From Ophelia neglecta (Eukaryota), in NCBI GenBank assembly GCA_965285935.1, contig OZ260664.1, positions 65,038,001-65,102,000 on the forward strand: a DNA stretch of 64,000 nucleotides, read 5' to 3'. The position numbers and the translations under genes were made by a program. Numbering within the stretch: the stretch's first letter is position 1; every line of letters begins with the position of its first letter. The notes under the pieces were generated by a model, which worked only from the letters and a program-made list of their open reading frames with translations, ran no database searches and had not been told where the DNA came from. Positions 999 through 24,700 of the stretch are shown piece by piece.

Positions 999-1618
999 GC
1001 TGCAGTTGAAGGCAGTGAATAAGCCAAAAGATGCAGTTGAAGGCAGTGAATAAGCCAAAAGCTACAGTTGAAGGCAGTGAACGAGCCAAACGATGCAGTT
1101 GAAGGCAGTGAATAAGCCAAAAGCTGCAGTTGAAGGCAGTGAATAAGCCAAACGATGCAGTTGATGGCAGTGAATAAGCCAAAAGCTACAGTTGAAGGCA
1201 GTGAATGAGCCAAACGATGCAGTTGAAGGCAGTGAATAAGCCAAAAGCTGCAGTTGAAGGCAGTGAATAAGCCAAACGATGCAGTTGATGGCAGTGAATA
1301 AGCCAAAAGCTGCAGTTGAAGGCAGTGAATAAGCCAAACGATGCAGTTGAAGGCAGTGAATAAGCCAAAAGCTGCAGTTGGAAGGCAGTGAATAAGCCAA
1401 ACAATGCAGTTGAAGGCAGTGAATAAGCCAAAAGCTGCAGTTGAAGGTAGTGAATAAGCCAAACAATGCAGTTGAAGGCAGTGAATAAGCCAAAAGCTGC
1501 AGTTGAAGGTAGTGAATAAGCCAAAAGCTGCAGTTGAAGGCAGTGAATAAGCCAAAAACTGCAGTTGAAGGCAGTGAAGAAGCCAAAAGCTGCAATTGAA
1601 GGCAGTGAATAAGCCAAT
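999..1618. repeat. Minisatellite, 31-bp unit (gctgcagttgaaggcagtgaataagccaaaa), about 20 highly similar copies
   Basis: Unit starts at 999, 1030, 1061 and onward, head to tail with no unique spacers. Confidence 0.97.
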
Positions 1619-3423: not shown

Positions 3424-3487
3424 CACTGTGTTTCAGCTTTGATCTGTGCCGAAATGCACCTCTTGTAGTACATAGTAAGTTGCCCAT
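3424..3487 (-). CDS. Candidate alternative first coding exon with an N-myristoylation/palmitoylation-like start (MGNLLCTTRGAFRHRSKLKHS + G)
   Basis: Kozak accATGG, 21 codons, donor GTG|GTAAGT, phase 1. Gly2, Cys6 and a basic patch. Confidence 0.65.
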
Positions 3488-5614
3488 GGTGTTGCCGCTG
3501 GTTGTATAGAGTACATATAATGACGACTGCTTCACAGCACCAAACTTCCATCAATAGTCAAACCTTAGAAAGATGTATCCTATATGGTCTAAAACCCTAC
3601 CATATTTGTTATAGCACACACTATTTGCACAGACTTTTTATCCAAATATAGAAAAATAATTGGCTGCTATTAGCTGGTTTTCCCTGGCAGTGATGAGCTT
3701 CGGCACACAAAGACAAAAGTCACCTAAATCCATCAGGTCTGTATTTTATAGGGTATTATTTACCAAACTATTAATTTCTGTCCAACTTCCCAAAATTCCA
3801 TCTGGTCAGCCCTGGAAACTTTGCTGAAAGTTGTTCAGTAATAACATGTTTATATTCACAGCTCAGTGTAGTCCATCAGTGTATAGATATGTTTTATAGC
3901 ATTTCTGTGAAGATATCTGAATAAAATTTTGGTGTGAGCTATAATTCCCAAATTTCAACCTCTATACACTGAGATATATTCTTAGACACTGGGGTTCTGA
4001 CTGGTCCATAGGCCACAGTGTGATAGCTGGTAGGAACCATGGGGAGATGAGGGCCTAGAGGTGACTATTATTTTGATAAAACAGCTGGCAGGAGGGCACT
4101 CCACAGCTAGTGGATATCCTAGCTTGGGCCTGAGGGTACACTCCCTGGGACACTCCAATACCTCCAAACATAAATGTTCATCAAGAACCTCGCCAGCTAA
4201 CGTCCTTGCTCTCCTCCCAGCTCTGAGTGGCTGCTGGTCTATTTACACATAAACATCACGATGCTGACCACTTTACAACTGATGGTGTTAATTAGACCTC
4301 AATTACTAATAAGAAATAACCACAACAAAGTCACCATCATCATCATATCAGCATGAATAATGAAGAAATATGACTTGGAGAAACATTTTTTTGTGGCCAC
4401 CATCATCTGATTCAGGAAGCACAGGAAAGATGAGCACTGTGTTAGGGACACTGACTTAAGGTGTACATCATCATTTAATATCAAGATGCTGAGTTCAGAA
4501 GTGAACCACCAGTAGGTGCTGATGAAGTGAACTATTTATGGTTTGAAAGCCATAATTACATATTATATGATGTAATTATATGACTGTCCAGTTGCTCTCC
4601 ATCAACCAGTGACTGATAGCAGACAGGCTGGTGAAATATCTAGAAAATAGTATACAATATCTCCAGGACAAAGAAACATCAGGTCAAATTGAATCCAGAC
4701 ACACCCATGAGGAAATAATGTTGATCCATTTGTCCCACGACATGCAATCCATTAACATCTGATATCTCGAATATAACAACTCAGTCACAGCCTAATTTCC
4801 TACACACCTTACTCCATGTACACTTATAGTGACTCCAACAGAAACTATCATAAAGTATGACATTGACTGATGTGAAGTTTTAACTACTTGGGGGAAACTG
4901 CACCAATCTGTGTGCCTTCTGGCAGGCTGGGTCATTGTGGACCTACTACATCCCTGCCTAGATAGGCTTCATTTAGCTCTACACTGATAACATGAGTTCA
5001 TGTTCATTCCAGTATTGTGTAAAGGTGAGCAGTAAATACTGATCAACAGATTCACTATCTACTCTACAGCATGGACAAAGCTGTTCAATCCTTGGTTACA
5101 TGTCTCTTGTTAACTAATTCACACCTAGGAGGGCTAGGTATGTGAAAGTTACAACAAACATTGGCAGTGCAAAAACCCCAGCTAAAGAAGAAATCATGCC
5201 GAATGTACCTGGGACTTTGTAGAAAATGTGGTAAGCCCATAATGACTAGGTAAAAATTAGGAAGGATGGTTATGCTGCTACATGTAGGCCCAAACCTATC
5301 GGGTAAATCATGTTGAGCAATGATAATTAATGACAAGTTGGGTATGTTGCTTAGTTAAACCGAGGCATATGGCCTGTCATCTACATCTCATCATCAAAGC
5401 AGCAGCTGAACCCCAAGCTGAACCCTTGACAAGATCTACCAATAGTCAAACTTCAACTTTAATGTGTATTAATGGCATTCATTAAAATCCAATTATCAGC
5501 ATCTCAGCTGAAAATGTTTGAACGAAATTCCTTGTTACACAAACTCTCCATCTTGGAGCAACAACACATGATCCTTGTCAAAACTGTGATGAGGTGTGTA
5601 TTTTACCATGCTAC

Positions 5615-5732
5615 GCTTACTTGTGTATTACCAATAAGTCCCTGCCAGTCATGTCTTATTGTGTATTGCCACTAAGTCTCTGCCATTCACTTATTATTTT
5701 GTTTTGCCATCAAGTCCCTGCTAGTCATGACT
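5615..5732. repeat. Degenerate tandem repeat of about 38 bp, 3 copies
   Basis: A ttgtgtattgccaataagtccctgccagtca-like core recurs three times. Confidence 0.7.
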
Positions 5733-6196
5733 GCTCAGATTAATTCTAATATTCAATACAGGGCTAAGTCCTGCTCAGAAGACTTGTACCTAAATATCAT
5801 TTTCCTAATCCTTGAACCTTGCCGAAGTCACACATGTTGATGACATAAAACTATTTTATCTGAAATGGAACAACTTTTTGTTTTGTTATGGCCTGATGGA
5901 ATTCTCATCTATCATGTTTAGGTATGAGGATCAGATTTCTTCATTTTCATTTTCATCATGAAGTAAATTAAAGCCATCTGGCATCCATTTAGGATCAATC
6001 ACCATTGTTTCATTATAGTTTACATGTGTTTACAGATTGTGGTCAGTGATTGGCTGTGATAAGAGGGAATTCTCTCATTCTGTTGGTTGAGTTGAGTTCT
6101 GGCCTGTTGCTGGTATTCTCAACTTGGTGGACACCCTAAGGTGATCATATGGCTGGGTGCTGAGAGAGATCTTGCTGGACACCCTCAGATGACCAT

Positions 6197-6306
6197 ATTC
6201 CTGTTATAGGCCTCAATTTACACCAGTCCTTATTCCTGTTAAAAGCCTCAATGTTCACTATTCAATATTTCAGTTGAAGGGCTTAATGTACACCAGTCCA
6301 TATTTC
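6197..6306. repeat. Degenerate tandem repeat of about 35 bp, 3 copies
   Basis: A tattcctgttaNaggcctcaatgtacaccagtcc-like unit recurs three times. Confidence 0.7.
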
Positions 6307-8003
6307 TCACAGTAACTGAGTTTATAGCCTGATGCCTTAGTACAGAGGTGGTCAGTAAGTAGTATTGGCCGGTACAGGAGGGTTCAAGTGGCCGTTTAAT
6401 AGTAGCAATAAGTCAGTAGCATAGGTAGAAGTGTGCCACAAAGGGGCTTGCTGCATTCACATGTACCAAGGTATGTATTGGTGTGTATGCATCAAACTGA
6501 CCAATATGTGAATTTTCAATATGAATACAACAGAAGATAACCACTTAAACAGTATATGATATTGAAGGATTGTTTTGAATAGCAAATTTAAAAAAAAGAA
6601 ACATTTTAATGCTTCACAAAAAGGAAATCTAGTTGCCGTACATGCATGTAAATTGAAGAGAGAACCAGTAGCCAGTATAGGGGAACAAGGAAAACCAGAA
6701 AATATACTGGGCCTCATACGAAATTCATTCCGCGATGAAAATCAACTTCAGAGTCCATGTAAAACAATATTATGTTATGGGAACCCATCCTGGGTGACTC
6801 AATTTACACAGACTGGCATTCCAATGACTTCCAAAGCATCCGACCCGATAAATAATATTCTATCTTTCAAAAATTTGTTACAGATCAGTTCATTTCAACT
6901 TGGATAGTTAAAACAACTCAAAAGATATTCTCAATTCAAACAAATTCAGAATAAACCTATTACTATTGTATTCCCCAATTATAACAATCCAAATATAACA
7001 GAAATAGATTTGATTACCGTATATGATGCACAGAATGTGTATCAGTTTATTAGCATTATTTTATAACTTTAAAAAAAAATCATTATACATAATGAACAGG
7101 AAGTTAATATTTGACTTACATTTAGTGAAATTAACAGTGTTACTCAATTTGCCACTCCTACAAAGCTTACAGAGATAAGCAGTCACATCTGAATGGAGAA
7201 TATCAACAGCTATATCATTTTGTAGTGCACTATTCAACCTGATTCAAATCTGAGCACTCCTTCTATCCCAGCTTTGTACTCAAGTGTGATAGGGTTATCA
7301 TTGAACAAACATGCTTTAAACCAATATTTACCACGGACAACTTATACTTTCTATAGGTGATAAAAATGCAGAAGAGATTTTGAAGTATCCAGGCTCAGTA
7401 AGTCATAAGACATCCATGCCCAACAACGGTAAATATTGTAAGTGGACAAGTTTGGAAGTGGTACGAGCACTCTCAAACTACTGTTGACCTGCTATCATTG
7501 GTTATAAAACATTGAGCTAATTTGGTTATAATATCTGGGTACTTATCCTCTGGGTCAACTACATTTTGTCGGCAGTTAACAAACATGAGGGAGTGGTAAA
7601 ATTGGCTTACAGACGAGGCTTGCTCACTGTACGTGTGACACGACTGCCTTATCTTATGCTGAAAAGTGGTGAAAAAACACAATATGTTTCCTCTCAGAAA
7701 GAAGGTTATGTATTGATGTGTGCTGGCCATACCCCCAGTTAACCATGGACACAGCCTGTGACTGATTGGGCTGACAGGTCACTATTCACATACATGTACT
7801 TGTACCACAGTACATGAGCTGTGTCAGGTACGGCTGGTTAGCTACACAACATTTACTCCACTATCTCACGGCAGAACCCAAAACATTTATGTAACATGAA
7901 TAATCTAGTCATAATCCAGTCAATCAGCAGCAGTTTTTCTTTGCACATCTCTTTGATTTCCTCCGCTACCAGGATGCAGGCCTTGCACAACAGTATAACT
8001 TAC

Positions 8004-8076
8004 CCCAGAAAATTGAGACTTCATTCAGCAAATCCTCAAGGGCCACAAATTCAGATGGTCTTAAATAATGAGCCAT
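8004..8076 (-). CDS. Candidate alternative first coding exon (MAHYLRPSEFVALEDLLNEVSIFW + G)
   Basis: Kozak aacATGG, 24 open codons with an amphipathic helix pattern, donor GGG|GTAAGT, phase 1. Confidence 0.65.
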
Positions 8077-9482
8077 GTTAGATTTCTATTGGATGACTCA
8101 GTATTCAGTAGAAATATTTGTGTGTTTTAAGGAGTTTATTTCCAAGTGATTTTGCCTGGGATCCCATGTATCAATGTGGGTGATCACACAAGCCAGGCCA
8201 GCCTATGAAGGTGACAAAGTCAAGTTGTCAGTCAGTGAACCCATCTTTAGTTATCTCCCAGTCATGGACATCTGCCAGTTCAATCCCCTCTGATATAATA
8301 CATCTTATCCTCCTGATGCTCCCTATCTCCTCAGCTGGTCCTTGTACACACTTTCTCTGTTTGGTATGACAAACCAGAACTGGTTCCTCAATGCCGTGTT
8401 CCTCTGATTGATTGAATACCACTATTACAACAATAAAGTGAAGCAAAACTCAATGCAACTAGAGACATCGGTGAAAGAACTGAGAGTATCTAGTGGTCAT
8501 ACCAGGTATGTACTTTATAATCATGGTCCAGGCTATGTTAAAATCCCTGTATAGCCCATGTACATGTGTATTCCTTGTTTGTGAACTATGAGCTAGCTAT
8601 TTTTGCTTATCGTTTTTTGAACTTTCACACCTGGAGCTGATCAAAAACACTCACAAATTGGTCATACCAGCCAAGGTTCTCTGACATCTGACCAATTTGT
8701 TGCTGACTTGGGTTATCTGCTTCATAAATCATGTTCACAGGCCAATCCTAGTCTACCTTTAACCTATATTTACCATCATAAATCATGCACAACTTGTCCC
8801 ACAGATACACATTGAAGTTTGTACATTTCCATCAAAGCCAGCTTATTAGCTTTCTTTTATTTAACTACCCCCTAAGAATTACACAGCAGTACAATATATA
8901 ACAAGCTGGGTCGTAGCACATGTTTATGTCTACCTACTGCATTTCAAAAGCATAGCATGGCAAACAGCAATTGTAACAAAAAAGGAAACAAATTCCCCCT
9001 AAATATTGGAAATAATCTGAAATGCATAAAAAAACAAGAACTTTGCTCATTTTATTTACCACTTTTTTTTCTGTTCAGACCTCAAGACAAACGTCTTGGG
9101 TAAATCATGGCAGGGCTCAGTTACCTTCTATATAACATTTTACATGGAAATACATTTTGAAAGCCTAGAAAATTGAGGAAAACATGGAATTGTTTTATTT
9201 ATTTTTTGCTGTTACTGAGGCAACCTAATATATATCCACTACGTTCATCAGTTCTTGCATAAGCGTATAGACATTTCAACACTGAAATTTTCCAACTCAG
9301 TAGAATATGCCAAGTCTTAACCATTTGTAAGGAAAAACCCTAGATACAAATCTGTGGGGAAATGGTTTCTGTAGTTTTAGTTGTTGTCATGTTACATGTA
9401 CTACAATTATAAATGGTGTAAGAGATGCTTTCTGATATTACAAATGATGAAATGGGACACAGGCTGTTATACATAAGTAGAC

Positions 9483-9727
9483 TTTTCTCTGAAAAAGGTG
9501 GAGAGCAGTAATATGTACTAACAGCATGGCAGCATGAACCAGGTACATGTTATATTAAAACTGATTGTTTGCTTCAATCCTTGGCATAAAAAAGGCCATC
9601 GTTTTTATTTTCTCTGAAAAGGTGGGGTGCAATAATATGTAACAATATCTGGACATGAAGCCACCTGGTTAATGTGTATTATTACCAAAATCATTTTTCA
9701 AAGTGGTTTGCTACAGTCCTTGCTATG
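9483..9727. repeat. Old diverged tandem duplication, about 125-bp period
   Basis: Both halves start ttttctctgaaaa(a)ggtgg..gca.taatatgta and end gtttgct.ca.tccttg. Confidence 0.65.
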
Positions 9728-10181
9728 ACCTGGTATCTCAGCCCAAGCTGTCACAACCCTCCACCTGATATGATACAGCTTGAACAGAGTCTGACATTAT
9801 ACATGAACATGTTGTGAGCAGTCAGATATGTACAAGTTAGTAAGCTGGCAAGATAGGAATGTTAAACAGTATAGGTTCTACCGATATATGCCAATGTTCA
9901 AAAGGATTAAAGAGAATTTTATAAATAAGTATGTGTACTGATGTTATAAGCAGTCAAGTACAGTGTCAAACAATTGAAGAGCTTGTAATTAAGCCATCTC
10001 ATCTCACTAAGAGCTGGGAGTCATATTCATGAAAAATACTTCACAAGTTTTAGGGCAAAATTAGCCCTACATTTCGAGTGCCAAAATGGTAGAAAGGCAT
10101 CATTGTTTACACAGATGTTGAGTACCTTGTACCCAATCATATAACAAACTCAATCTTCAATATAAAGAAAATTCTACTTAC

Positions 10182-10218
10182 CAACAAATTTGTCTAACAC
10201 AATTGATGTGAGAGCCAT
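10182..10218 (-). CDS. Candidate alternative first coding exon (MALTSIVLDKFV + G)
   Basis: Kozak agcATGG, 12 codons, donor TTG|GTAAGT, phase 1. Confidence 0.55.
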
Positions 10219-11432
10219 GCTCCTGATTTAGTTTTTGAGGGATTTTTACTCAAAAGGAAATTCCTGTGATCCCCGACCGTTTCCAGCTCTAAAGGAAGCT
10301 GCAGCAAGTGTGTCATACCAACACTAGTAAGCTGTCTGGGCTGGGGGCTGGAACGCCCAGAGATCTTGTAGAAATGTTTCTAGTCAAAAATCAAGAATCT
10401 GATTAACAAACCTTCCATTTAGCCTGAGTGGGCTGAAGGTCAGGAGTTCAGTGTATGCCTCTGAATTACATGTGCTGAGAAGTGTACTTCTCCATGACAG
10501 AGTAGGAGTCTGCTTACCACACTAACCTCTGCCTTAATGCAGGGTTACAGAGGGAGGGATGCCCAGGCATTAGCAGGGAGAGAGTTCCACCATCTGTATC
10601 CCTACTGCAACTAATGCAGCTTTTTATACGTAAACCTACTCAGGTAACTTTTTTTCAATCAACAAAGGCATTGAGTTACATGATACTTGAGCCAGAATAA
10701 ACTTTCAAGAGAATTCACATTAATAAAAATTGGCTGTTTGTAGTGAAGTTGGCAGCAACTAATTCCCCCTTTCTAGTACGGCTCAAACAAGATGGAAAGG
10801 GACATTCTTTCATCTTGTTCAGAATGTCAACTATACAAGTGCATTTCTGCACATTTTCCCCTGAGGTCGCAAGGAGCAGACTCCACAGCACTCTAAACTG
10901 TCTCCAGATTGTATCATACCAATAAAACCATTAACATATACCTTACGATCTAGGCTTGTTTCTCTTTGGTGAGCCAACACAAAGCTGGCATCTATTACTT
11001 TACACAGGCCCAGGAGAAGTGCTTACCCAAACATATCTGAACCTTTAACATTAAATAACCAATGATGGCCTGCCTTTCAGCTCAGTCTGGGGTTTAAAGG
11101 CACACTAGATCACACCAGATCTGACTGTTAGACCTCTTTGTCAAATGTAAAAAGTGAATGGACAGAAGAAGGCATAAAAGCTATGAAGGAAATTGAAGTA
11201 CAAAGCTGAAACAAATGATCTGAGAGTGAGTAGAGTGTGGTGTAAGAAGTAGGAGTTGTCCTGATCCTAGTGCCAGCCTGCTGGTATGGTACTAATTACA
11301 GGGTCTGTGATGTCTGCTATTCTGTCTGTCCAGTCCATTAATCCCAAGGCCTTCCAAATAAACACCCTGTCTGCCAGAATGCTTGGCTATCAAGTCATTA
11401 GATAACAACATGACACTGCTAAATTTCTATGT

Positions 11433-11830
11433 CACAACCCTATCATAGAGGGTATTTCAAACACAACCCTATCATAGCGGGTCTTTCTAACACAGGCATA
11501 TCATAGAGGGTCTCTCTAACACATGCATATCATAGATGGTCTCTTAGATATCAGCATATCATAGAGGGTCTCTCAAACACCAGCATATCATAGAGGGTCT
11601 TTTAAATACAACCATATATCATAGAGGGTCTCTCAAACACAAGCATATCATAGGGAATCTCTCAAACACAAGTCAATCATAGAGGGTCCCTTCAACACAA
11701 GCCTGTCATCTCAAACACAAGTCTATTATAGAGGGTCTCTTAAACACAAGCCTGTGATCTCAAACACAAGCCTATTATAGAGGGTCTCTTAAACACAAGC
11801 CTCCCGTGCAGTCTCTCAAACACAGCCCTC
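11433..11830. repeat. Degenerate minisatellite of about 29-30 bp (tcaaacacaagcatatcatagagggtctc), about 13 copies, some truncated
   Basis: tatcatag cores recur at 29-30 bp spacing from 11441. Confidence 0.9.
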
Positions 11831-14800
11831 TCAAAGAATGACTCTTTATTATGCACATTAACCAGTATTTCCAAATACATATACATACATATTTGTTTAG
11901 TGTTTTCAATAACTATACACTCTTTGTTACAACTCCACTAAGCAATGCAGGGAGATTAATTCTTTATTAGTTATTTCAATTTATAAATGATGCTTTAACA
12001 TTAAAATGTACATAATATTCACGGCATGCCCTCATGGAACCAACAACCTCTTACATAAAAATACATAGCCAGAAACTTGAGCAGTGTTTGTTCCTAATAT
12101 TATAAGCTTACACATTAAATTTCAAACAGTATAAATGACCAGTTATTTCAGACTGCATAGACTGTCATGATGATGGTCTAAAGTTATCTCAAAGAATATT
12201 TAATGTTGTCCAAAATAATCTTGCGGGTGTGTGTGTGGTTTGCATTTAATGCAGACCAAAGTAGTATTTTCATTTCATTTACTGAAGCACCTCATCACAG
12301 TTAGTAGTAACACACATAAGGGCTTGTCTACTGGTGCGAGCAGACATTTCCATTTAATGAGCTTAGGACATTGAATTTTAACTTCACTTAGCCATCAGAA
12401 GTTGGAATTTTACTTCAATATATTTACTGTAAAAATCAAAATATGTGTATTTACTATGGGGTGAAATTTTATCAGTGTCAAGTTTATCCAAAGTATTCGG
12501 AAACAATCATCTTGGTTTGTTTTGGAAACAGTAAACCACAAGATGCCTTTAGGGACACAAATATTTATTCAACAGGGGCAATGTGGTATATGGGTGTCTT
12601 CACCACAATAAAAATGGACATGATGATGTCCTGTTTACAATATCCCCTAAATGTACCCAATATCTAACCTTAGTGTTATCAGTGAAAAATCCCACTGACA
12701 GAAAACAGAAAAAGTGTAAATTGGTTCAATTTCATCAGACCTTCCTCTATTTTCTACCATAAAAATCTCATGTCTGTGCTATTTGTTTAAAAACATATTC
12801 TGCTAACACACTATAGCTTCCTCTTATAGTTTCATTCTTTTTAAAGTTTCATCCACTTTGTGCCATATTACATTTTCAGAAAAAAGGAAAACTTGATTTT
12901 TTTTTCATGGCAAAATATACAGTATTTTGACCTTTATTTCCATCCCCTATGTTATAGCCATTTCCACAGAAATTACCTTTGAACTACATGTATATAAAAC
13001 AAATATGTATCCTGCACTGTTCTCCTCCCAGAGCAAGAATCCCCATTAAACTTCATTGAGATTAGAAAATAATGTGCCAAAAAGGTACAACAGAGCACCC
13101 AAGATCAATGCCTAAGACTGAATTATTTATTTGCTTGGATTCTGGGATGCATGTTTTTACCTTTATATGATCAAGGAAGATGTTAATATCTGAAGTGTCA
13201 GAATGGTGGAGGTAATGTTGAAAGGAATAATATTTTCCTTTTAATGGTTCACACTCCCACAAAATAAAAAACTTTCTACCTCAATTCACATGAAATAAGT
13301 TTGTCTCTTCACATTTCACAAGAGATTCTGGATACAGTTTACAGACTTGTAACTATTCCTTGCCATCTTAATTGATAAAGTAAGAGTGTTGTGGAGTGAT
13401 AACAGGGGACCTGATCTGTAGCTACCACCTCAAAGACTGCTGGAAAAAGTCAGACTCTGTAATTAAGTTGGCAGGATATAGGAAAACATTTTAGAGATGT
13501 TGCTAGTCAAACATACTCCCCTGGTAAGAACATCTGGCCAGTGTAACCCATACCAACTAAAACTACTACTCTCAATGAGCAGGTGCATCAATACTGTTCA
13601 TGAAATCAGCCAGGTTTTAATGCTGCACAACAATAGGCATGTGAACAATATCCAGTGGTATTCCACAAGAATGTCTGTTATCAGGAACTGGAGGTGATGA
13701 AGACCTGAATGTTAATACATGGCAGCACTCTGGATGGACATGAATTGTAGAAAGGGGAGAAATGTATCCACAAGTCTTGATACACAGATAAACTATCTTG
13801 TTTACACCAGACAAACACTGTCAGAGGCATCATGTTTACCACACACATTTACCAAAAGCTAAAGGAGGGGCAGATGATCCAAGAAATATTTGTGAAATGT
13901 TAAAGATACACTGTCAACAAATGGCCCTCACACAGTTTGTCTAGTTTTCTATCCTAAGCCAGGACTTTGAAGGACCCACTTGCAAATAAATTCACAAACT
14001 CAACTATTTTCAGCGGTTGATACAGTTCACATTCCTAACTAAATCCAGAGTCTCAGGCTCCTATTTTCTTGCATTAGCCACAATTTATGAGGAGTTTAAT
14101 GGCTTAATTGCCATGAAGCAGGTATCCAAATTGGTTAGAATTTTGCCTCCTTGGTGTTAGCCAGTAACTCACTATTTCTTTCTAGGCTAAATATGAAATA
14201 AGAAATACCATGCAGGACATATAATAAAGAGTTCTGAACACAAGTCTGTGTATCAACAGACTCCTAACTACCTGGCCAGACTCAGCAGCTCTTAAAACTT
14301 AAATTTATTACACAAAATCACCTGTCATGGGATGTAATTTTACTCTCATAACACTTAGTTCCAAAACCATTTCTAACACAAGGGCAGCTTATTTTAGTCA
14401 TAATTAAATTAGTCGCACAAAGTTTACTGAGTATTACGATTCTTGAAAACAGGGACAAAAATACTACCATTGAAAGTGGCACTCTTCTGAAATATTTCTT
14501 GATTGTCATAGACACTCAAGTTCTTAGGGTTGAAATGTAAATTACCTGATACTTCACTTAAAATTTGTATTATAGATGTGAGTTTAAGAGATGTTGTTTG
14601 GCAGACATGGTGCCCTCCTTAAGGGGAGGATGGTAGATGAGATAAAATATTCATGGCCACCCGCAGTCCTGAAAACATGTTCAATCTAGGTTCATAATCT
14701 TTAATCCTGACCTGTAGGTCACACTGAGGTAGACAACTATCAGGTGTTACATGTGCTAAGGATGCTGAAAAACTGAGTAGTTTCTCTAATGAGAAAAGTG

Positions 14801-15996
14801 GTGAAAACTATGAGTATCAAAAGCAGTACTTTTACTTAAAATGAAGAAATTCTTGGTCTATTTAAAAGAATTTTCCAGACTAGAATTCATTACACAAACA
14901 AAACACATAAAAAATAAGTTACAAAAGTTTATAAACACAGAACTCCTGTGGTCATCTTTACTGTACCCAGTGACTGGGAAGCTCCACTGAATAAATGTGC
15001 TGTTTCATTTAGTTCTCCTTTCAGTGTTACTCAAGAAACAGTTGTCTGTTTGTGTTGGAAGCTGGGTTGTTTGGATCACCTATAGATGGACCAAATGCTA
15101 ACATTTCATCTTCTGGCCATCCTAACCATTGGATAGAATGCACACTGCTGGCCTACCATCTGACTGCACTGTACTGTACAACCTCTTACAATCCAAGGCT
15201 AGCAGGCGTTTTGGTAGCTAGAATTTGGACACTGACAATGTACATTGTAAAAGAACATGAACAATCCATAAAGGAGTAACACAATGTTAAAGGCCTTATC
15301 TTTTTAGACCTGGAAACATAGACTGGGGAATCAAGTAGCCTGGAAGCTGTTATCATACATGTACAAGTACATGATGATTCTTTCTAAAGACAAACATGAT
15401 GATACTTCAAGCCAGTAGGTTTGGATGGATGGACTGATTGCTTACATCTGACTACATCATTTTTGGTGCAACTCATATTTCAGGTTATAATCTACCACAT
15501 TTGAAAACACAAGTAGGGAGACTTGAAATATATTGCCAGTGTGAAGGCATTTTTATCTAGTGTAGTGCAGATTTAATGAACATCAGAAGCATATCAGACA
15601 GATTGTGTTTTTTATGCAGCTTGGCATTACCCTGTTCTTTGTCTAAGGGCATAAAAACTTAGGGTGTTCCCTAAAAACAATGATAAGTGAAGATAGGTGG
15701 TCCACTCGGATCCTGTACATAAATTCTCATCATTGGTGCTTTTGTGATAAAATCATGTGAATTTTCTTGCTGTTAATTGCTGTATGGGCATAATCACTTA
15801 AACCGGCTGTCTTGGGTTATAAGAATCACTGAAAACATGAGATCTTGCCAAAGGGAAAGCTTTCTCAATAAAAAAGGTCCATTCTCAGACCTAGCAACTC
15901 TGGGTAATTGGCTCCAGTGACATCCCATTGTAAACTGTTTACATACAGCTCTAGGCTCATGCTCAACATGAGATAAGTTTAGAGAGGCGGGGTTAC

Positions 15997-16147
15997 CTGC
16001 TAATTTCTGCTCTCTGTATTTCTTCCACACTTTGCTGAGGGCACCTTCTTTTATGCCCCTCATCCGGTCACTCACACTTCTACTCCATTTGAAGTCCGGC
16101 TGCCAGCGGAAATCTCGAGGTTCCTTTTTCTCTGCCATGGTGGTCAT
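15997..16147 (-). CDS. Alternative first coding exon (MTTMAEKKEPRDFRWQPDFKWSRSVSDRMRGIKEGALSKVWKKYREQKLA + G)
   Basis: 50 open codons, strong Kozak accATGG at the second Met, donor CAG|GTAACC in phase 1. Protein-like composition with retained CpGs. The end REQKLA parallels REQA of the 21682 exon. Confidence 0.75.
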
Positions 16148-19100
16148 TCACATTAATATTTTAAATTTAGTCAGAACTATCCTCAAGAAATCTGTGTAAT
16201 GAATTCCTTTATCATTTTTGATAACATCATTTTCAATTCATTCAATCCACAGCTTACTCAATGTTTCACTTGGGGTAAGCATGCCGAAAGATGAGGAGAG
16301 GAGACTAATTTCCAAATGGCACTTGCAATAACATAATGTCAAAACATCCTGTGAAGACTGTCAGCTCTCCTAAATCAGAGGACAATTAAACATACAAGCA
16401 CAGCATTTGATAGCTTCACCTTGGGACTCAATGAGTACCTTGGCTAAGACACTGGAAGCTGTAAAGGCAGCTTACATACATTCACAGAAGCATCTGGATG
16501 TTTAAAGCATATACCATTAATATCCTAAGGTGTAACTTCACTCAGCACTTGCCTATTAGGCACTTACTCCCCACAGGTGTGTATGTGGACTCCCTGTGGA
16601 ACATGTCACCACAATGCTGCATCTTGCTCACAGAGGTTTGCACAAGTGGTGGTCTCAATAAGTAGGCTGGGATTTGTGCTTCTCAAAAAAACTGCACAAA
16701 AAGCCAGAAGCAGGAACCAGCGCTACTTGCAGTTTTTCGGCTCACTCCACACCAGTAGCCTTCTCCTATCAAAGCTCACAACGACATGTTTACATGCCTG
16801 CCACAGATGACCTGTGCCCCTCCAGCATTGAAGAAACTTTCTCTCTAAAGAGCTGGCTTTTATCGCTGTAGATAACCCTAGAGTGAGTGCTGTGAGTGGG
16901 CCTCAAATGCTCAACTCCTGGCCAAATGAGCCTGGCACAAGGCAGATTTGAGGTGATTTAGACAGGCCCATGGAGCTGTCATACCTAGCCCCTTCCTTGC
17001 TACAGTAACTATGTGAACCTGCTCACACAGGGGGCTCCACCCGCCTCTCACTGCCAGCCTGCTCCTGGCTCCTGCCCAATACCCACAGCCTCTTGGCCAG
17101 GGGGATTACTCAATGTCCTTTATCTGAGCTAAAAACTCTAGGGATTATCCTCCCACATTACTATTGCACTGTGTCCAGTTTTGTCTTACATCACAGGTCA
17201 ATGAGTAGATAATTTATTGAGAAAAATCTATACCCTGAAGCTTTTCATTTTTTTTAACAAAACCTATGATTACTGCAACATTGTTTTGCCATAATGAAAT
17301 ATTAACTAATCAGGTGCATACCAATTTGCCATCAGCCTCATTGTGTATGAAGTGTGAAGGATATATTACATCAACTGATTAATTGGATCAATCCATTGTC
17401 CTTGTAGTCACAAGCTAATCATCCCATGGGGTGATCAGCCTTTGACATGGTTCATTTAGGAGTTCCCCTCCCTTTGTCCTACTTGTCTACCATTACATAA
17501 GGACCTGACAATCCCATCATCTGATCTGACCTGGCAGTTACATGACCTCTGCTACAGTGAGGATTCAGTAGCAGTGTGAGGGACTAGAAGGCTGATTGGG
17601 CAGACCAGCAGTTGAGGAGCTGTAGTGTTGAGTCTTTGAGATGGGCTGTAAGTAGCCGCCAGCCTAAATACCAGAGTACCAGGCTAACTGGGAGACTCCA
17701 TAATATTAGTGTTCAAATGTACAGTTTATTTCCCTCATTCCTGTTTTCTTGTGACATTTACAAGCCATTCTAAACAGCAACTTAAATGTCTTGCTAAAGG
17801 GGAAATTTGCGCTGGGAGTATCCCTCTGTGTATATTAGCATTTGAAATGTCATCTCTATTTATAAAGCCAGTTTGTTTTAAGTATAGACAAGCAATAGCC
17901 AGATGCTGTTTCTAGTTGAAAATCACCCTGTGACTTCTGGGTAATCTCAAGGATCTGGATCATATCCAGGTAACACAACATACAGGCCTACTTAAATCAA
18001 GTGAACATGTTGTAAATTAAAACACGCTTTATTCTTTCTCTTTAATATGATTTAGCACAGAGTAACTTACTCGCAAGTTTAAGCACACCATTTTTTCATT
18101 AATTCCAACAACAAGAACAGTAAAAATAAAGCACCAGATGATCCACTGGGTCCTGCAGCATCTCCAATGTGCGTCCTGGGAGAGCCAGCAGTACATAGCC
18201 ATGATCTATACCACACACAACAAATTGGACTTGTGAAAATAACAAACAGCCCTCGGCAAATCTACAACAGCAGTCTCATTAAAATAATTAATCAGCTCCT
18301 AATGAAGCAGACAAGACTTGAGCTGTCCTTAGACAGGGCACGGGTGTGATCAGAAACTAAGGTTTGGTATGAAGTGTTAGGGCAAGTCAATCAAGTACAA
18401 GTGTATAAAGTAGCAGGAGACAGAACCTAAGTGGAGAACCCTTGTGGTCAATACCAAATCAATCACACTGGAGGAGAGAGGGGATACCCATAAACCTTTC
18501 AATAGTTTGCCCAGTCACCAGGCATAGACTCCAGGCCCAGTCCATAGATCATATGTAACAAGTCAAGATCACAGCAAGGATGGAAAGCTCTGTAGACTGC
18601 TTCACAAGTCTACAGTGTTATCATGATAACTGGTGATTTATTCATTACACATAAAAATTTATCAACATTTCACTTAAGCTTTAAGGCAGTGGTGGAGGTG
18701 GGTGTGCCCTGAGTAGTGAGACAGAAGGGCACATTCAGGACTGTCAAACTCTATCACTACTTTGATTGAAGACACGTCACAATAAAATTAAAATCAATGA
18801 AAAAAAGTATACTTGCACAGTAATTTCATTTTGTTAATTCTCACCGAAATGCATTTTGAAACTAAACAAAAAGGGACAATAAACTTTTGGTAGGTGATGC
18901 AAACCAGATGAAGATGAAGGACTTCCAAGCATGGGTAACCCCAGTAAATAGAGGACTCAAACCCTGGCTACAGAGGTGATGACATTCCCATTAAATCTGA
19001 CAATCCAGAATATACTGTGGTAAATGCCATCAAAATCCCAGATGAAGAAATATATGCCTGAATAACCTCAGAAAAATGTGTAGAACCTTGAGAAAGCAGC

Positions 19101-19506
19101 AGGGGGCAAGAAGGTTAGTTGAAAAATGTCCTTGAATTTTGTCAATCAGTGCCAGCTGAATGGGCAATGGCTGAGCCCTGTTTTATGTCCATGACACAAG
19201 GCTCTTCACCTCAGCTTGTTACAATACCCATTTATTACCAGTGTGCCCCCAGCTGACCCTTATATTAGCAGGCACCCAAACTTGACTTTTGTCTGGCTCA
19301 TTCATTTATAATTATAAGTCAGCCAATTTAAACAAGAAGGTTCAAGAGTACAAATTGCCATAAAGCTATGTTGCAAGTTATTTTCATTAGAAGCAACATC
19401 ATATCTCTCCCTAATGATCAATGTCAGTTGATGAAACAACATGTTACCAATTACACTTATGATATAAATCCAATAAAGTCCTGGCAAATGAATAGGAACA
19501 ACTTAC

Positions 19507-19582
19507 CTTTCAGCATGGCCTGTGTTACAGGCTGAAGGGGTGAATGAAATACTGTGGTAAAACTGAGACTGTCTACAGACAT
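19507..19582 (-). CDS. Candidate alternative first coding exon (MSVDSLSFTTVFHSPLQPVTQAMLK + G)
   Basis: 25 open codons from ATG, with a second in-frame gccATG, to a consensus donor AAG|GTAAGT in phase 1. Confidence 0.55.
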
Positions 19583-21681
19583 TACCCTATCAAGGCTGGC
19601 AAAACAAAACACCGGCTCTCTTGTCAAGCACCTGCAGTTCTCCCACGAAAAGTAATCAGTAGATTTGTTTGAAAACCTTCTTGGAATGCCTACTTTTTAG
19701 GAAACCTTTGTTAACCTGTAATGAGCTGATAGCCCTGTGCCAAATAGTCACTATCAACCTCCTCTCACATGGAGCTTACACTATAAAACCACACTGAGTA
19801 ATTATCAGGATGTACTGTTGAAGATTATTCCAAGAAATGCTAGAAGAACAGCTGTACAATCATTGGAAAGGGCCCTGTTTGAGGGAACACAGGAAAGGAT
19901 TTTAGAGAGGAAAGCAAGATTAACAACTACAGCCAATGTAAACTATGATCTGATAATCAGATTATGACAAACTAACAAACTGATCAGGCTGAATGCATGT
20001 TAAATACTTAGTAAGTCAGGACATGTATACACCAGGGCTTAGGAACATTTGTCTGGAACAATCTTTACCTTTGATAACCTTAACACAGACTAAGCACTTT
20101 CCTGTGCTATATCTTCAGATATCTGAATGAATAGTTAACTTAACATTTAAAAAAAAAAAAAAATATATTATTTTTTATGATTGATGAACATGATTGTCAA
20201 AATTTGAACACATTATAAAAAGGAGGAGGCTTTTTATAAATATAACTTGTTGTCCATAACATCCTCTGCCATAAATATGTTTTATTTAACATTAATAACA
20301 GTTGACAATAATTTCATGCAGGAATAGCAGAAACCATAACTGGATACCATACAGGCACAAAAACAACTGGCTTTTATCTCGTATGTTTTGCCCATGAAAA
20401 CCTGAGACTAGAAATTAAGACAAAGCACAATGAAGTTTATTCCCTTAAAAGCACAATTTTAAAAGGTTAAAACCATCAGCTGTCAACTATAATTGTAAAT
20501 ATTTTGGTGAATGGGACACTTAATTTATTTTGTGACATTTTTCCATCTTAAAAGTGAAATAAAGGAATTTGATATGATAAGGCTTTGCTTTACTGTTTGG
20601 TTTATCAAGGTTTTAATAATCTTGAACTAGAAACTTGTTGACATTGTTTGTAGTAAATATTGATATGTGTAAGATGATTTCTCAATCATTTTCACAGAAA
20701 TTGGAGAAAAATAAAGACAGATGTAAATCTAAAAGTTAATTAAAGTTCCCTTTAAATATATACATATTTGAAAAAATTAAATAATTCCTACTATTTAATC
20801 GATTGGCTCTTAATCTATTTTTTCTCTTTTTATGCAAGTTTGATTACAAAAACACTAAAAAGGCTAGTTTTGGCAAGTAGGTAATGATGGAGCTACAAGT
20901 AACAGAACTATTTAGCCAATTTAAGGTACTACTTATTCTAATTTTTCAAAAGTATGCAGGTTACTACTGGTCTTTAGACCATAGCCCATACTGACAAGGG
21001 GGGGGGGGGGTGTTCAGTAGTTTCCCCAGTCATGAGCTGATCAAGCCAAGCATGGTCAAAGTAAAACTTTACTTCTTAATTGGGAAGGAGTTGCAGAATC
21101 ACAATATTTTTTTGCCCTCAATCCAACCACAATTGAGTAGACAATTTTTTGCCAAGGTTACAAATGCAGATTATCATTTATTGCCAGTAGGAGGACACAC
21201 GTAAACTGAAATTACACATTATAATACTGAGATTTTTCTCTCACAGCTTTACCATTTTGAGCTGTTTTAATTTAGTTAACTTCACTGACAAAAGATACCA
21301 ACACTTTCCACTTTCAAGATATACAAATCGATTCTTTAAATTGCCACTATTGATTGTTGAAATTGCCACTATAAGTCATATTCGATGTTCATCCCATCAC
21401 TATTTAATTCAGATGGTAGAAAGTCTACCTGCTCATAAGAAAATATGTGTACAACCTTTTCCATACACTTTACACCTGGCTGATCATCCTTTGATGAAAG
21501 TGATTGTCATTTCCATAATAGTTTCAGAAGTCTTGTTAAGTAAAATAATTAGAAACATACATATTCATGTGAATAATAATTTGTGCTATAAAGAAAAATG
21601 CATTGATTGTAACTTCATTTTTATGATAAATCATTTGTTACACAAGATATTTTAGTCAATAAAACAAATTTATGTACATAC

Positions 21682-21718
21682 CAGCTTGTTCTCTGTCAGT
21701 CCTGTATGCCTTGGCATC
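21682..21718 (-). CDS. Small coding exon (DAKAYRTDREQA + G, phase 0/1)
   Basis: Acceptor tttttatttcAG and donor CTG|GTATGT. 37 nt, in frame with the large exon. Confidence 0.78.
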
Positions 21719-24700
21719 CTGAAATAAAAATATAGACAGGTTTTAAAAGTGACAGCTTAAGTGTGCTTGTCCTAACACCTGCATTAACTTTAAATGAACA
21801 TCTGCACAACTTTTGAAGGTCTTTTTAATGATGACTCATGGTGGAAAGGAAGAGTATGGCAACATTCTTCATGATGACTAGGTCATTTTTTAAGTACAAT
21901 TAATAGCTTTTTTACCATAAATACTATATCTTAGTAATTTGCAGTTTAAATACTTTACAGATATTTATGAGAGTTTAACCTTTAAGCAGACATCACTCAT
22001 AAAGTTACTCAGTTCCTAAATCACAAGGTATGCAAAATTTAATAACCAGAGTATGTGTGTGCTCAGAGCAGGTAGATGTGGAAGGGGGTACTCTACAAAT
22101 GCAGGATGGTAATTCACAAAAGACTGAGACTCAAGCACGCCAATTAAACTGCAGCATAAACTGCGGCTTCAATAAACTGTTATCTGACACCACAGCTTTA
22201 TCAATGTTGTTGGTGAATCCTTAAATGCAGCAGTAAGTCAGGAGTTTGGTAATTTCATTTTTGGACATATTACCAAACTATCAGTATAAAACATTTAAAC
22301 TGATGCAGATTTGAGCTTGCTTGCTGGTTTAAATTGTTGGAATTGCATTACAAGCATATTGATTTTAATCCACAGGCCTGTCCATTGAAACCCATTGATG
22401 TTGACTTAATAAAGTCAGATGAAATCATGCCCCTGTTTTATAATTTGTAAGCTACATGTACATGAACATGTACATGTATACCATTGGGCATAGTATTTAA
22501 ATTGACTTGGTCCATGATGTCATTATCTTGACTTCATATCTGAACAAAAATGGTGTCTCCATAGATTGTCCAATAATCGAGCTACTCATATACTTGTACA
22601 GGTACACCAAAAAACCCATAAAGCTCTTTATGGTTACACATATGTAGGAAGCAATACCTGGTGTGATATTCATTTTAACTGATATCATTTCTCACAGGCA
22701 ACACATGCTCCTTCTCCATCCTGGACTACCTGACAATATTAAAGACTAGCCTACCTTGCTGTCACAGCTACAATCCACACATTTAGGGACCAGGCCTAGC
22801 CAGCCTTTACGGAGGGACCTCAATGACACTCTCGACAACTCTTTGGCCCTGGAAGAGACACTGTCAGTTCTCACAGGCAGCCTGACAGCCTTTCTGGGAA
22901 AAGGCTTTGAAGTCATCTTTCAAAACCACCCACTTATTCCAGAGAGCCAAATGAGAAGCCTTCTGTCAAACGGTTTGTCTCAAAATGAATGAATTTTGCG
23001 ACATAAAACATGATGGTATTTCCTTCTCCTGTAAACACCAAGTGCTCAGCAAATGAATGTGAAGCGTCCCCCGATGTAAGAAATCCTACACTGTAAAAAG
23101 TGTATAATAGAAACTTGTCCTAAGCCTGCTTGTTACCACCGGCAGCAGTTTCATTCTATCTGCAACCTCTCACGTATACACTATATATTTATATGTGTGC
23201 AAAGTTCCTTAGGGATAATATAAACATCCCATTTGTAAACGATTCATTGAAAGTTCAATTTTCATTTGAGAACCTGTTAAGAAATGCGAGACAACCACCG
23301 CTGTGAACTCAAGCCAGACAGGAGAAGGCAATTACTCTGGTTTATAATGGCAGTTACACCAGAAAACAAACTCCTGTACCCGGTGCAGCCAGCGTTAATA
23401 CATAGTCAATCTTATCACGGCTCCCAATCGGCAAATTACAGGTGCTTACCTGTACCACAAACCAGCTTAAAAGTACACGGCTTCTCAAGTACCACCTCCG
23501 TATGACGGCTGGTTTTTCTTACATGACACAAATGTGTTCCAACCGAGAAGTGTTATAATTCAATCAGAAGTGCTCCAGTTGTTTGCCAATCAAATAATAT
23601 CAGAGGGCAAGATCTGACAGAGAATCTATCACAGGGCACAGAAATCAAACACTACCATTAGAATTTATTGAGCTAGAATCAATAACAGTTCCAATCTAGC
23701 CATAACAAACTGAAAACTATTGGAAAGTAAGCTGCAAGTGCTGCACATATGACATGGCTAACCTACTGTGTTAAAAAACGTAGCATTTATGATTGTCATT
23801 TTAGTTTGATTTGTAATACTTATAAATACAAGTAGCTAAGATTGCAGGGCGGGTTCAGGACTGAACTGGTTGTTTGTAGAGTTAATGTAATACCAGGCAT
23901 TTCAGTGAGTGGAGGGGGTTGGGGGGGGAGGGGGGCTGAGGGGCAATGCACGTGTGACGAGGTCCAACTCCCAGTACTTGGGTAAACATATCTTGAAGGC
24001 TCCTGAGGCAAAGCTTTTTTAACCCTTCTCATTAGAGAATGATCACTAGCTACTACATACATGTATCACACCTAGAAAGACATATAAACAACCAGCTGCA
24101 ATAGTGACTTCCTTAACATTAGAAAAATTGAAAATAACACCATACATGTAGAGAGTTTCATATAAATTTCTAGGTTGAATGAGATACCTTAACCACTCTT
24201 AAATAAAATAAGTGATGCAATGAAAATGTAGGAAAATATAGTGAAGTTGACCAGTACACTACTTGCTACTAGTCAATGTGAGTAGCTGAAGTAGTATCAT
24301 AGAAGTATTTCCAGAAAATCCACACCACTTGCCCAATTACATGTACATACAATAAATACATGTAGACAATATTTTATTATTTTATTGTCATTCAGCAGAT
24401 GCCTGGTCGGGGTAGTAAACAGTCTGTGAACAGTTGATAAGTAGACTTCTCACAGTGTATTGTTAACTGTATAAATAAGCTGGTTGACAAGAGACCATTC
24501 ATCAGTCTACATCTGTCAATACCAATCACAGTCACGCCAGTCTCCCGACTGGCAGATACATAGCTAAGGAATTACACCGATTCTCTTATCCTTTGTATCA
24601 GATAAAAAAAGATGACAAGATATAAACAACCTGATGATAAACAATCTGATGATAACAATTTGTCTTAGGGTAACATTGCAATAGTTTCCAACTTAAAAGC

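What the first reader, a model, noticed from the sequence alone, without database searches (positions are those of the whole stretch)
3424..21718. Array of interchangeable N-terminal leader exons, all ending G|GT in phase 1
Seen: within 18 kb, the last exon of the long isoform (21682) and five separate ATG-initiated mini-ORFs (19507, 15997, 10182, 8004, 3424) all end with a single G before a GT donor. Four of the five have purine(-3)-ATG-G Kozak contexts and four have GTAAGT. Inference: this is a variable-first-exon/constant-region design, as in plectin, UGT1 or protocadherin loci. It would give one catalytic core at least six leaders: a long disordered arm, a basic/aromatic leader, an acidic helix, a lipid anchor and two short ones. 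Vertebrate DLC1/STARD13/STARD8 have several leaders joining just before the SAM domain, but I do not know these peptides or this number of leaders from any description. Caveat: short ATG-to-donor phase-1 hits also arise by chance, so individual short exons are uncertain. Gene predictors would miss most of them.
Basis: partly seen in the sequence, partly recalled or inferred. Interest (0 to 1): 0.8.

Follow-up and report, generated by a model that had tools for sequence, protein, structure and literature searches.

The report
Alternative first exons of a DLC-type RhoGAP gene
A minus-strand gene of the DLC1/STARD13 family (SAM, RhoGAP and START domains) has a row of small start exons that all splice in the same reading phase onto the first SAM-domain exon; this design is already known for the family, and here it includes a conserved leader that looks like a lipid anchor.

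Summary
The predicted acceptor exists 15.9 kb left of the window: ...ttttttcag|AG ATA GAA GCA = (E)IEAVEACKWLRAAGFPQYAQMYE. It is a phase-1 SAM exon of a single-copy RhoGAP+START gene.

Conservation supports three of the six donors:
- The 37-nt mini-exon (21682) matches mollusc mini-exons.
- The 15997 leader belongs to an old leader family (RSFS...W..RE.KLA|EIEA) found from insects to vertebrate DLC1.
- The 3424 leader (MGNLLCT...) has a collinear counterpart (MGNVICT..., G|GTGAGT, phase 1) in an unannotated relative.

I also found a further conserved leader just outside the window (MAGYPMCMC...).

Leaders 19507, 10182 and 8004 have statistical support only: four G|GTAAGT phase-1 ATG mini-ORFs in 18.5 kb against 0.23 expected.

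The design is not new. Mouse and human DLC1 use alternative promoters and first exons. RefSeq lists at least five distinct N-termini in Haliotis rubra, five isoforms each in Ptychodera and Lytechinus, and five leader forms in amphioxus. The leaders are not duplicates of one another, so the UGT1/protocadherin analogy fails. It is a new member of a known kind.

The parts
25351..27473 (-). Large open exon of the long isoform (disordered, Ser/Pro-rich). The donor cag|GTGAGT after 25351 is in phase 0. The 5' limit of the exon was not determined.
   Evidence: ORF list, donor phase, no Pfam family, no BLASTP match to the long arms of other species.
22755..22916 (-). It could instead be a cassette exon of the long isoform.
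   Evidence: Read; length and phase computed. No conservation evidence.
21682..21718 (-). 37-nt mini-exon (DAKAYRTDREQA + G), phase 0 in and phase 1 out. It is the last variable exon before the SAM exon for the long isoform.
   Evidence: It resembles the mini-exons KLNTGLSERRQA (Haliotis) and KLNIGNHERQQA (Patella) and insect ...RSQSDRHLA, all directly before EIEA.
19507..19516 (-). Shortest leader, MLK + G, donor aag|GTAAGT. There are two other readings: a start at 19582 (a 25-aa leader), or an internal 25-nt exon 19531-19507 behind the strong acceptor ccccttcag| (phase 0 in, phase 1 out).
   Evidence: Unverified. Two- to four-residue leaders (MR, MWLS, MIII) are annotated in Haliotis, Branchiostoma and Capitella.
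15997..16138 (-). Conserved basic/aromatic leader MAEKKEPRDFRWQPDFKWSRSVSDRMRGIKEGALSKVWKKYREQKLA + G, donor cag|GTAACC. The likely start is the ACCATGG at 16138; an upstream ATG at 16147 has a poor context.
   Evidence: Local alignment scores of 60-62 against annotated leaders, with a shuffle maximum of 46. Alignment with insect, Haliotis, hemichordate, scorpion and vertebrate DLC1 leaders shows RS[FVL]S..[RK][IVM] ... W..RE.[KR]L[AT]|EIEA.
10182..10218 (-). Candidate leader MALTSIVLDKFV + G, AGCATGG start context, donor ttg|GTAAGT.
   Evidence: Statistical support only; no homologue found.
8004..8076 (-). Candidate acidic leader MAHYLRPSEFVALEDLLNEVSIFW + G, AACATGG start context, donor ggg|GTAAGT.
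   Evidence: Statistical support only; no homologue found. Its expected position in the relative lay beyond the DNA I could fetch.
3424..3487 (-). Leader MGNLLCTTRGAFRHRSKLKHS + G, ACCATGG start, donor gtg|GTAAGT. Gly2 fits the N-myristoylation consensus, Cys6 is a candidate palmitoylation site, and a basic cluster follows.
   Evidence: A collinear counterpart, MGNVICTCGACAVIPTKFVS + G|GTGAGT in phase 1, lies in the relative at L019:15537-15477(-) = L020:13874-13934. It is the top ATG-anchored 7-mer of 2347 (score 29, next best 16). DNA identity is confined to AACCATGGGCAAC.TA.T.TGTAC.

Best explanation
This stretch is the 5' part of a single-copy DLC-family gene on the minus strand, with the domain order SAM, long linker, RhoGAP, START.

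It carries several independent start exons. Each presumably has its own promoter. Each contains an ATG and ends with a G that is the first base of a split codon. All splice to one acceptor, cag|AG ATA GAA..., at G000:C7:65,022,061, which is 15.9 kb left of the window. Every isoform therefore reads leader-E-IEAVEACKWL... and shares the same SAM, RhoGAP and START body.

The terminal G is explained twice over: it is the consensus base before a donor, and G+AG keeps the conserved Glu of EIEA.

Shown here: the sites, the phases, the acceptor, the identity of the gene, and conservation of the mini-exon, of the 15997 leader, of the 3424 leader, and of one more leader outside the window (MAGYPMCMCMTVTTESMQSLDFPSRKLC, C7:65,035,620-65,035,536).

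Inferred: that each exon has its own transcription start; that 19507, 10182 and 8004 are used; and that the leaders direct the same GAP to different places or partners. For the MGN..C leader, that would mean membrane anchoring by myristate plus palmitate and a basic patch.
For: - Gene identity: RhoGAP in three exons and START with E = 1e-34. SAM exon found by motif, read, and weakly matched to SAM_2 on its own. The gene is single copy.
- The acceptor is in phase 1, begins AG, and encodes (E)IEAVEAC.WL.
- The density of phase-1 ATG mini-ORFs with G|GTAAGT is about 17 times the background of this genome.
- 15997 leader: significant similarity to leaders annotated from insects to mammals.
- 3424 leader and the out-of-window leader: both have counterparts in a relative (ENA ERZ26168297, contigs 342/359). 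They lie in the same order, with the same phase and G|GT. The flanking DNA there does not align. The out-of-window pair scores 56, against a maximum of 41 in 20 shuffled all-against-all comparisons.
- The same design is annotated in many animals: at least 5 distinct N-termini in Haliotis rubra, 5 isoforms each in Ptychodera and Lytechinus, and 5 leader forms in Branchiostoma. It is published for mouse and human DLC1 (PMC2839985, PMC5118400).
Against: - There is no transcript evidence.
- Three leaders (19507, 10182, 8004) and the 22916 exon have no detectable homologue among 98 annotated leaders or in the roughly 75 kb upstream of the SAM exon searched in the relative. That search ended about where the homologue of 8004 would begin, so it is not informative for 8004 or the leaders beyond it.
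- The statistics are post hoc.
- 19507 can equally be read as an internal 25-nt exon.
Confidence: 0.8

Rival explanations
1. Only the conserved leaders are real (long arm with mini-exon, 15997, 3424 and the out-of-window PMCMC exon). The three unconserved mini-ORFs (19507, 10182, 8004) are chance ATG-to-donor matches.
For: No homologue was found for these three. They are short (3-24 aa). Chance sites of this kind do occur in this genome, 5 per 400 strand-kb.
Against: With 3424 set aside, three G|GTAAGT phase-1 hits remain against 0.23 expected (P about 0.002). Two of them also have A(-3)/G(+4) starts, a combination with G|GTAAGT that was seen 0 times in 400 strand-kb. Lineage-specific short leaders are common in annotated relatives.
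Confidence: 0.12
2. The 19507 exon is not a first exon. It is a 25-nt internal micro-exon (19531-19507, PVTQAMLK) used in place of the 21718 mini-exon in transcripts that start further upstream.
For: A strong acceptor (tttcattcaccccttcag|) lies 25 nt before the donor. The frame is open for 60 codons upstream. The exon would enter in phase 0 and leave in phase 1, exactly like the 21718 mini-exon. Its ATG lacks G at +4.
Against: Two- to four-residue leaders are annotated in other species. There are no transcript data either way.
Confidence: 0.3
3. The mini-ORF exons belong to other transcripts nested in the long first intron (non-coding RNAs or separate small genes) and do not join the SAM exon.
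For: No junction was observed. The introns would be 19-38 kb long.
Against: All share the one phase that fits the acceptor, and all end in G, which preserves Glu. The 15997 leader is found fused to EIEA in real annotated proteins of many phyla. The conserved leaders keep their order and phase in the relative.
Confidence: 0.05

Closest known systems
Mammalian DLC1 (ARHGAP7) alternative promoters and first exons (Sabbir et al. 2010, PMC2839985; five isoforms from alternative promoters are stated in PMC5118400)
   Same: Distinct first exons, far apart, replace a short stretch just before the SAM domain. In mouse, 47 aa replace 13 aa from an exon 133 kb upstream. There is also a long isoform with a large N-terminal arm. 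The 15997 leader aligns with the vertebrate leader ...RRSFSDHIR..ALDVIWKN.R..RLA|EIEA.
   Different: Here the exons lie within about 40 kb instead of hundreds of kb. There are up to eight candidate starts. Two conserved leaders (MGN..C and PMCMC) have no vertebrate counterpart among the 98 leaders compared.
RefSeq isoform sets of invertebrate 'rho GTPase-activating protein 7-like' genes: Haliotis rubra/rufescens/asinina, Patella vulgata, Ptychodera flava, Lytechinus variegatus, Branchiostoma lanceolatum
   Same: Many different N-termini join directly to (E/K)IEA..AC.WL. These sets include a long arm, a shared mini-exon ending ..ERRQA, the RSFSERV leader and very short leaders such as MR.
   Different: These are automatic annotations in other species. 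None of them carries an MGNxxCT or PMCMC leader.
Plectin-type alternative first coding exons (from general knowledge, not tested here)
   Same: Unrelated first exons, each thought to have its own promoter, give one protein body different N-terminal targeting peptides.
   Different: A different gene family. The comparison is one of principle only.
UGT1A and clustered protocadherin variable-exon arrays (from general knowledge)
   Same: Many 5' exons, each with its own promoter, splice to common downstream exons.
   Different: There the variable exons are large paralogues made by tandem duplication. Here the leaders are tiny and share no sequence with one another, and the flanks are not repeated.

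Membership tests
DLC family RhoGAPs (DLC1/STARD13/STARD8) | N-terminal SAM domain beginning (E)IEA..AC.WL..GFPQYAQ | tested here: met
   The exon at L003:4061-3990(-) reads IEAVEACKWLRAAGFPQYAQMYE. On its own it gives SAM_2 at 15.8 bits, E = 0.016, below the cut-off because it is only a third of the domain. The second and third SAM exons appear (QQFPIDITSVEKDHDFLDQDSIQSLFR; RRLNTLNKCATMKIEAPPRK).
DLC family RhoGAPs (DLC1/STARD13/STARD8) | RhoGAP domain (PF00620) | tested here: met
   Three consecutive exons match profile positions 1-42, 47-90 and 90-132, each above the cut-off.
DLC family RhoGAPs (DLC1/STARD13/STARD8) | C-terminal START domain (PF01852) | tested here: met
   120 bits, E = 1.2e-34. 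There is one copy in the genome.
DLC family RhoGAPs (DLC1/STARD13/STARD8) | GAP activity towards Rho GTPases | not testable with these tools
   Needs a biochemical assay.
Gene with alternative first exons converging on one acceptor | Several ATG-bearing exons whose donors all have the phase of one downstream acceptor | tested here: met
   Six donors in the window and one outside it are in phase 1, and the acceptor is in phase 1.
Gene with alternative first exons converging on one acceptor | Spliced transcripts joining each donor to the common acceptor | not testable with these tools
Gene with alternative first exons converging on one acceptor | A separate transcription start upstream of each leader | not tested
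   No CAGE or 5'-end data. In-frame stops 0-3 codons before the ATGs of 15997, 10182 and 8004 show only that these are not internal coding exons.
Gene with alternative first exons converging on one acceptor | Leaders conserved in other species | tested here: inconclusive
   Met for the mini-exon, for 15997, for 3424 and for the out-of-window leader. Not found for 19507, 10182, 8004 or 22916; the DNA of the relative that could be reached did not extend far enough.
Tandem-duplicated variable-exon arrays (UGT1A, clustered protocadherins) | Variable exons are paralogues of one another | tested here: not met
   No direct repeats link the leader exons or their flanks; only intronic minisatellites were found. 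The leader peptides are unrelated to one another.
N-terminal dual acylation signal (SH4-like: myristoyl-Gly2 plus palmitoyl-Cys) | Met-Gly start fitting G-{EDRKHPFYW}-x(2)-[STAGCN]-{P}, with a nearby Cys | tested here: met
   GNLLCT here and GNVICT in the relative both fit by inspection. Cys6 is kept, and the relative adds Cys8 and Cys11. The consensus is quoted from memory (PROSITE PS00008).
N-terminal dual acylation signal (SH4-like: myristoyl-Gly2 plus palmitoyl-Cys) | Actual lipid attachment and membrane localisation | not testable with these tools
   Needs metabolic labelling or imaging of the expressed leader.

The most novel reading that the evidence does not exclude
This lineage makes a constitutively membrane-anchored DLC-type RhoGAP from a dedicated first exon (MGN-x-x-C-T: myristoyl-Gly2, palmitoyl-Cys6, basic patch), and perhaps a second Cys-rich palmitoylated one (PMCMC leader). 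Both are conserved in a distant relative. No lipid-anchored isoform of the DLC family turned up in the one literature search I made or among the 98 annotated leaders compared.
Probability: 0.45. Interest if true: 0.45.

Novelty: new member of a known kind. Interest (0 to 1): 0.3.

Why it matters
The result shows that the multi-promoter, multi-leader layout of DLC-family RhoGAP genes, studied so far in mammals because of DLC1 silencing in tumours, is ancient and is kept in an unannotated invertebrate genome.

One leader family (RSFS...KLA) is shared from insects and molluscs to vertebrates. That makes it a candidate regulatory module worth testing.

The conserved MGNxxCT leader suggests a way of targeting this GAP to membranes that has not been described for the family.

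In practice, gene predictors would miss most of these exons. The coordinates given here can seed a correct annotation.

Tried and rejected
- **Own-species proteins.** None appeared in the word searches or the representative search. The best matches to the central exon are 43-50% identical.
- **Walking upstream in a relative.** I walked through ENA ERZ26168297 in ten look-ups. This found the MGN and PMCMC leaders but ended 13.9 kb upstream of the MGN exon. Introns there are about 3 times longer, so the counterparts of 8004, 10182 and 15997 were not reached. All look-ups are now used.
- **Second relative (P0001, L008).** It has even longer introns and was dropped.
- **tblastn of the leaders against the relative's DNA.** No significant hit. 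The two homologues were found by listing phase-1 ATG-to-donor candidates and comparing the peptides.
- **The 732-aa long arm.** No Pfam family and no BLASTP match to the long arms of other species.
- **Repeats and paralogues.** The leader region is not repetitive in the genome, there are no internal duplications, and there is no paralogous gene.
- **RNA genes.** Rfam and tRNA scans of the window were empty.
- **Spliced models.** The only joined string was made inside a local script: eight residues of the SAM exon were appended to the 15997 leader as an anchor for a MAFFT alignment.
- **Masked and human-like sequence.** N runs in the background loci were left as they were. No contig looked human.
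Full report
**Where and what.** The window is G000:C7:65,038,001-65,102,000, and the feature lies on the minus strand. I fetched 60 kb to the left of the window. There I found, in order:
- three short SAM-domain exons;
- a 398-codon linker exon (ADDSDDEEQCALSDKWKYQRSSRRWSRR...);
- three exons that match consecutive parts of the RhoGAP profile;
- a START exon (E = 1e-34).

The START exon occurs once in the genome. By similarity of the linker exon, the closest annotated relatives are bivalve and gastropod molluscs at 32-39% identity. Unannotated ENA contigs reach 46-50%. The species itself was not in the protein collections.

**The observation.** All six donors are as described.

| Last exon base | Peptide before the split codon | Donor |
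|---|---|---|
| 21682 (37-nt exon 21718-21682) | DAKAYRTDREQA | ctg\|GTATGT |
| 19507 | MLK | aag\|GTAAGT |
| 15997 | MAEKKEPRDF...KKYREQKLA | cag\|GTAACC |
| 10182 | MALTSIVLDKFV | ttg\|GTAAGT |
| 8004 | MAHYLRPSEFVALEDLLNEVSIFW | ggg\|GTAAGT |
| 3424 | MGNLLCTTRGAFRHRSKLKHS | gtg\|GTAAGT |

Each exon is 3n+1 long counted from its ATG (or, for 21718, from its phase-0 acceptor). For 15997 the likely start is the second ATG at 16138 (ACCATGG), not 16147. In-frame stops lie 0-3 codons before the ATGs of 15997, 10182 and 8004, so these cannot be internal coding exons.

**Is it more than chance?** I took 20 stretches of 10 kb from three chromosomes of the same genome, 400 strand-kb in all. G|GTAAGT preceded by a phase-1 frame open from an ATG occurs 5 times in them. 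That gives 0.23 expected in the 18.5-kb interval against 4 observed (P about 1e-4). With a purine at -3 and G at +4 as well, G|GTRAGT gives 0.09 expected against 3 observed. The test is post hoc but clear.

**The predicted acceptor.** It is there, at L003:4061-3990(-), which is C7:65,022,061-65,021,990, 15.9 kb left of window position 1:
- sequence: ttctttttttcag|AG ATA GAA GCA GTC GAG GCT TGC AAA TGG CTG ... TAT GAA G|gtaggt;
- G + AG gives Glu, so every leader is followed by EIEAVEACKWLRAAGFPQYAQMYE.

This also explains why all leaders end in G. G is the consensus base before a donor, and it preserves the Glu found in nearly all family members. A few have K or Q there, from A|AG or C|AG. The introns would be 19.4 kb (from 3424) to 37.6 kb (from 21682).

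**Conservation, 15997.** Annotated proteins from other animals show what precedes EIEA. The 15997 leader belongs to an old family:
- Nilaparvata: MAEAKEYRFFRSFSAKV...FWRRLRERKIA
- Haliotis: ...NWVRSFSERVRGF...REKKLA
- Ptychodera: ...IRSLSARDR...KSRRRKLA
- scorpion: ...FIRSFSERI...WWKKVREHRLT
- Xenopus and mammalian DLC1: ...RRSFSDHIR...DVIWKN.R..RLA

Our peptide scores 60-62 against these, with a shuffle maximum of 46, and it aligns over RS[FVL]S..R[IVM] and W..RE.KLA. This leader is therefore real, and it is not new.

**Conservation, the mini-exon.** DAKAYRTDREQA matches the 12-residue mini-exon that Haliotis (KLNTGLSERRQA) and Patella (KLNIGNHERQQA) place between upstream exons and EIEA. In those species it is shared by the long isoform and by shorter ones with their own first exon. 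Here, an ATG exon at 22916-22755 (54 codons, phase 0) fits the mini-exon in frame and may be such an extra start. It is unverified.

**Conservation, 3424, and a leader outside the window.**
- The ENA assembly ERZ26168297 holds a relative whose first SAM exon is identical in protein sequence.
- I walked upstream in 10-kb steps through contig_342 and the overlapping contig_359. At each step I listed phase-1 ATG-to-donor candidates.
- About 61 kb upstream of its SAM exon lies ACCATGGGCAACGTAATCTGTACC..., which reads MGNVICTCGACAVIPTKFVS + cag|GTGAGT. It is 20 codons long and in phase 1.
- Of 2347 ATG-anchored 7-mers on both strands of the 91 kb held, it scores 29 against MGNLLCT; the next best scores 16.
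- DNA identity is confined to the start codon and the first seven codons.
- Comparing all candidates of both species gave a second pair. MAGYPMCMCMTVTTESMQSLDFPSRKLC + gtg|GTAAGT lies at window -2380..-2464 (C7:65,035,620-65,035,536, GCCATGG start). MAQTYLPMCMCFKVHSKSVASLDLAFNIHK + aag|GTGAGT lies in the relative.
- That pair scores 56, against a maximum of 41 in 20 shuffled all-against-all runs. Again it is an island of identity in DNA that otherwise does not align.
- The order MGN exon, PMCMC exon, SAM exon is the same in both genomes.

**What remains open.**
- Leaders 19507, 10182 and 8004 (and 22916) have no homologue among 98 distinct annotated leaders.
That is roughly where a counterpart of 8004 would begin. 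The absence is therefore uninformative for these leaders.
- With 3424 set aside, three G|GTAAGT phase-1 hits against 0.23 expected still argue that most of them are real.
- 19507 is ambiguous. The frame is open 60 codons upstream, a second ATG lies at 19582, and a strong acceptor at 19531 would make a 25-nt exon with the same entry and exit phases as the 21718 mini-exon.
- Transcript evidence could not be obtained.

**Comparison with what is known.**
- Mouse Dlc1 transcripts start at alternative promoters, and their first exons replace a short stretch just before the SAM domain (PMC2839985). Five human isoforms from alternative promoters are reported (PMC5118400).
- RefSeq lists at least five distinct N-termini for Haliotis rubra, five isoforms each for Ptychodera flava and Lytechinus variegatus, and five leader forms for Branchiostoma lanceolatum.
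- The design and the order of magnitude of leaders are therefore known.
- Unlike UGT1A or protocadherin arrays, the leaders here are not copies of one another, and their flanks are not repeated.
- The new points are modest: this species' particular set (up to eight candidate starts within about 40 kb), and two conserved leaders without counterparts in annotated species.
- One of those two fits a myristoylation-plus-palmitoylation signal followed by a basic patch. One literature search found no lipid-anchored DLC isoform.

**Verdict.** Three of the six donors are validated by conservation and three remain probable. The UGT1/protocadherin analogy and the implied novelty are not upheld.

Noticed in passing
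L002:7536-7620 (-) = G000:C7:65,035,536-65,035,620, 2.4 kb left of the window: A further phase-1 leader exon (MAGYPMCMCMTVTTESMQSLDFPSRKLC, GCCATGG start, gtg|GTAAGT). It is conserved in the relative as MAQTYLPMCMCFKVHSKSVASLDLAFNIHK. The Cys-Met-Cys motif might be palmitoylated.
   Followed up: yes
window 22755-22916 (-): An ATG exon of 54 codons in phase 0 that fits the 21718 mini-exon in frame. It may be an extra start of the same gene, like the MADVCFY.../MAELC... exons that precede the mini-exon in Haliotis and Patella. No sequence similarity to them was seen.
   Followed up: partly
window 37459-38694: A minisatellite of 84-nt units (15 copies, 94% matches, 249-nt higher order) that is open in all six frames. 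It accounts for the cluster of long overlapping ORFs there. It lies in an upstream intron or flank of the gene.
   Followed up: partly
window 998-1617, 1648-1910 and 11433-11802: Intronic tandem repeats of 31-nt (20 copies), 35-nt and 29/49-nt units. The first one produces the overlapping 'ORFs' at 859-1617.
   Followed up: partly
L005:1-8000, L006 and L007 (G000:C7:64,978,001-65,006,000): Directly 3' of the START exon there is at least 28 kb of a tandemly repeated unit with recurring open frames (GSGRRQITMRRRTGKWPVPFCQVRK..., FFWTLLSFGRQKSYRRAQSA..., MIKWSNLLFCPNRLEILISNF...). It looks like a satellite or a repeated element array.
   Followed up: no
L020:3447-4382 (+), relative ERZ26168297 contig_359: A 311-codon open frame about 10 kb upstream of the relative's MGN exon, with phase-1 GTAAG donors inside it. 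It has no Pfam family and no match in our window. It could be a lineage-specific long leader or a mobile element.
   Followed up: partly
window 51095 (-): Another atg|GTAAGT donor with a 17-codon phase-1 ATG frame far upstream. It may be an upstream exon of the long isoform or a chance match.
   Followed up: no
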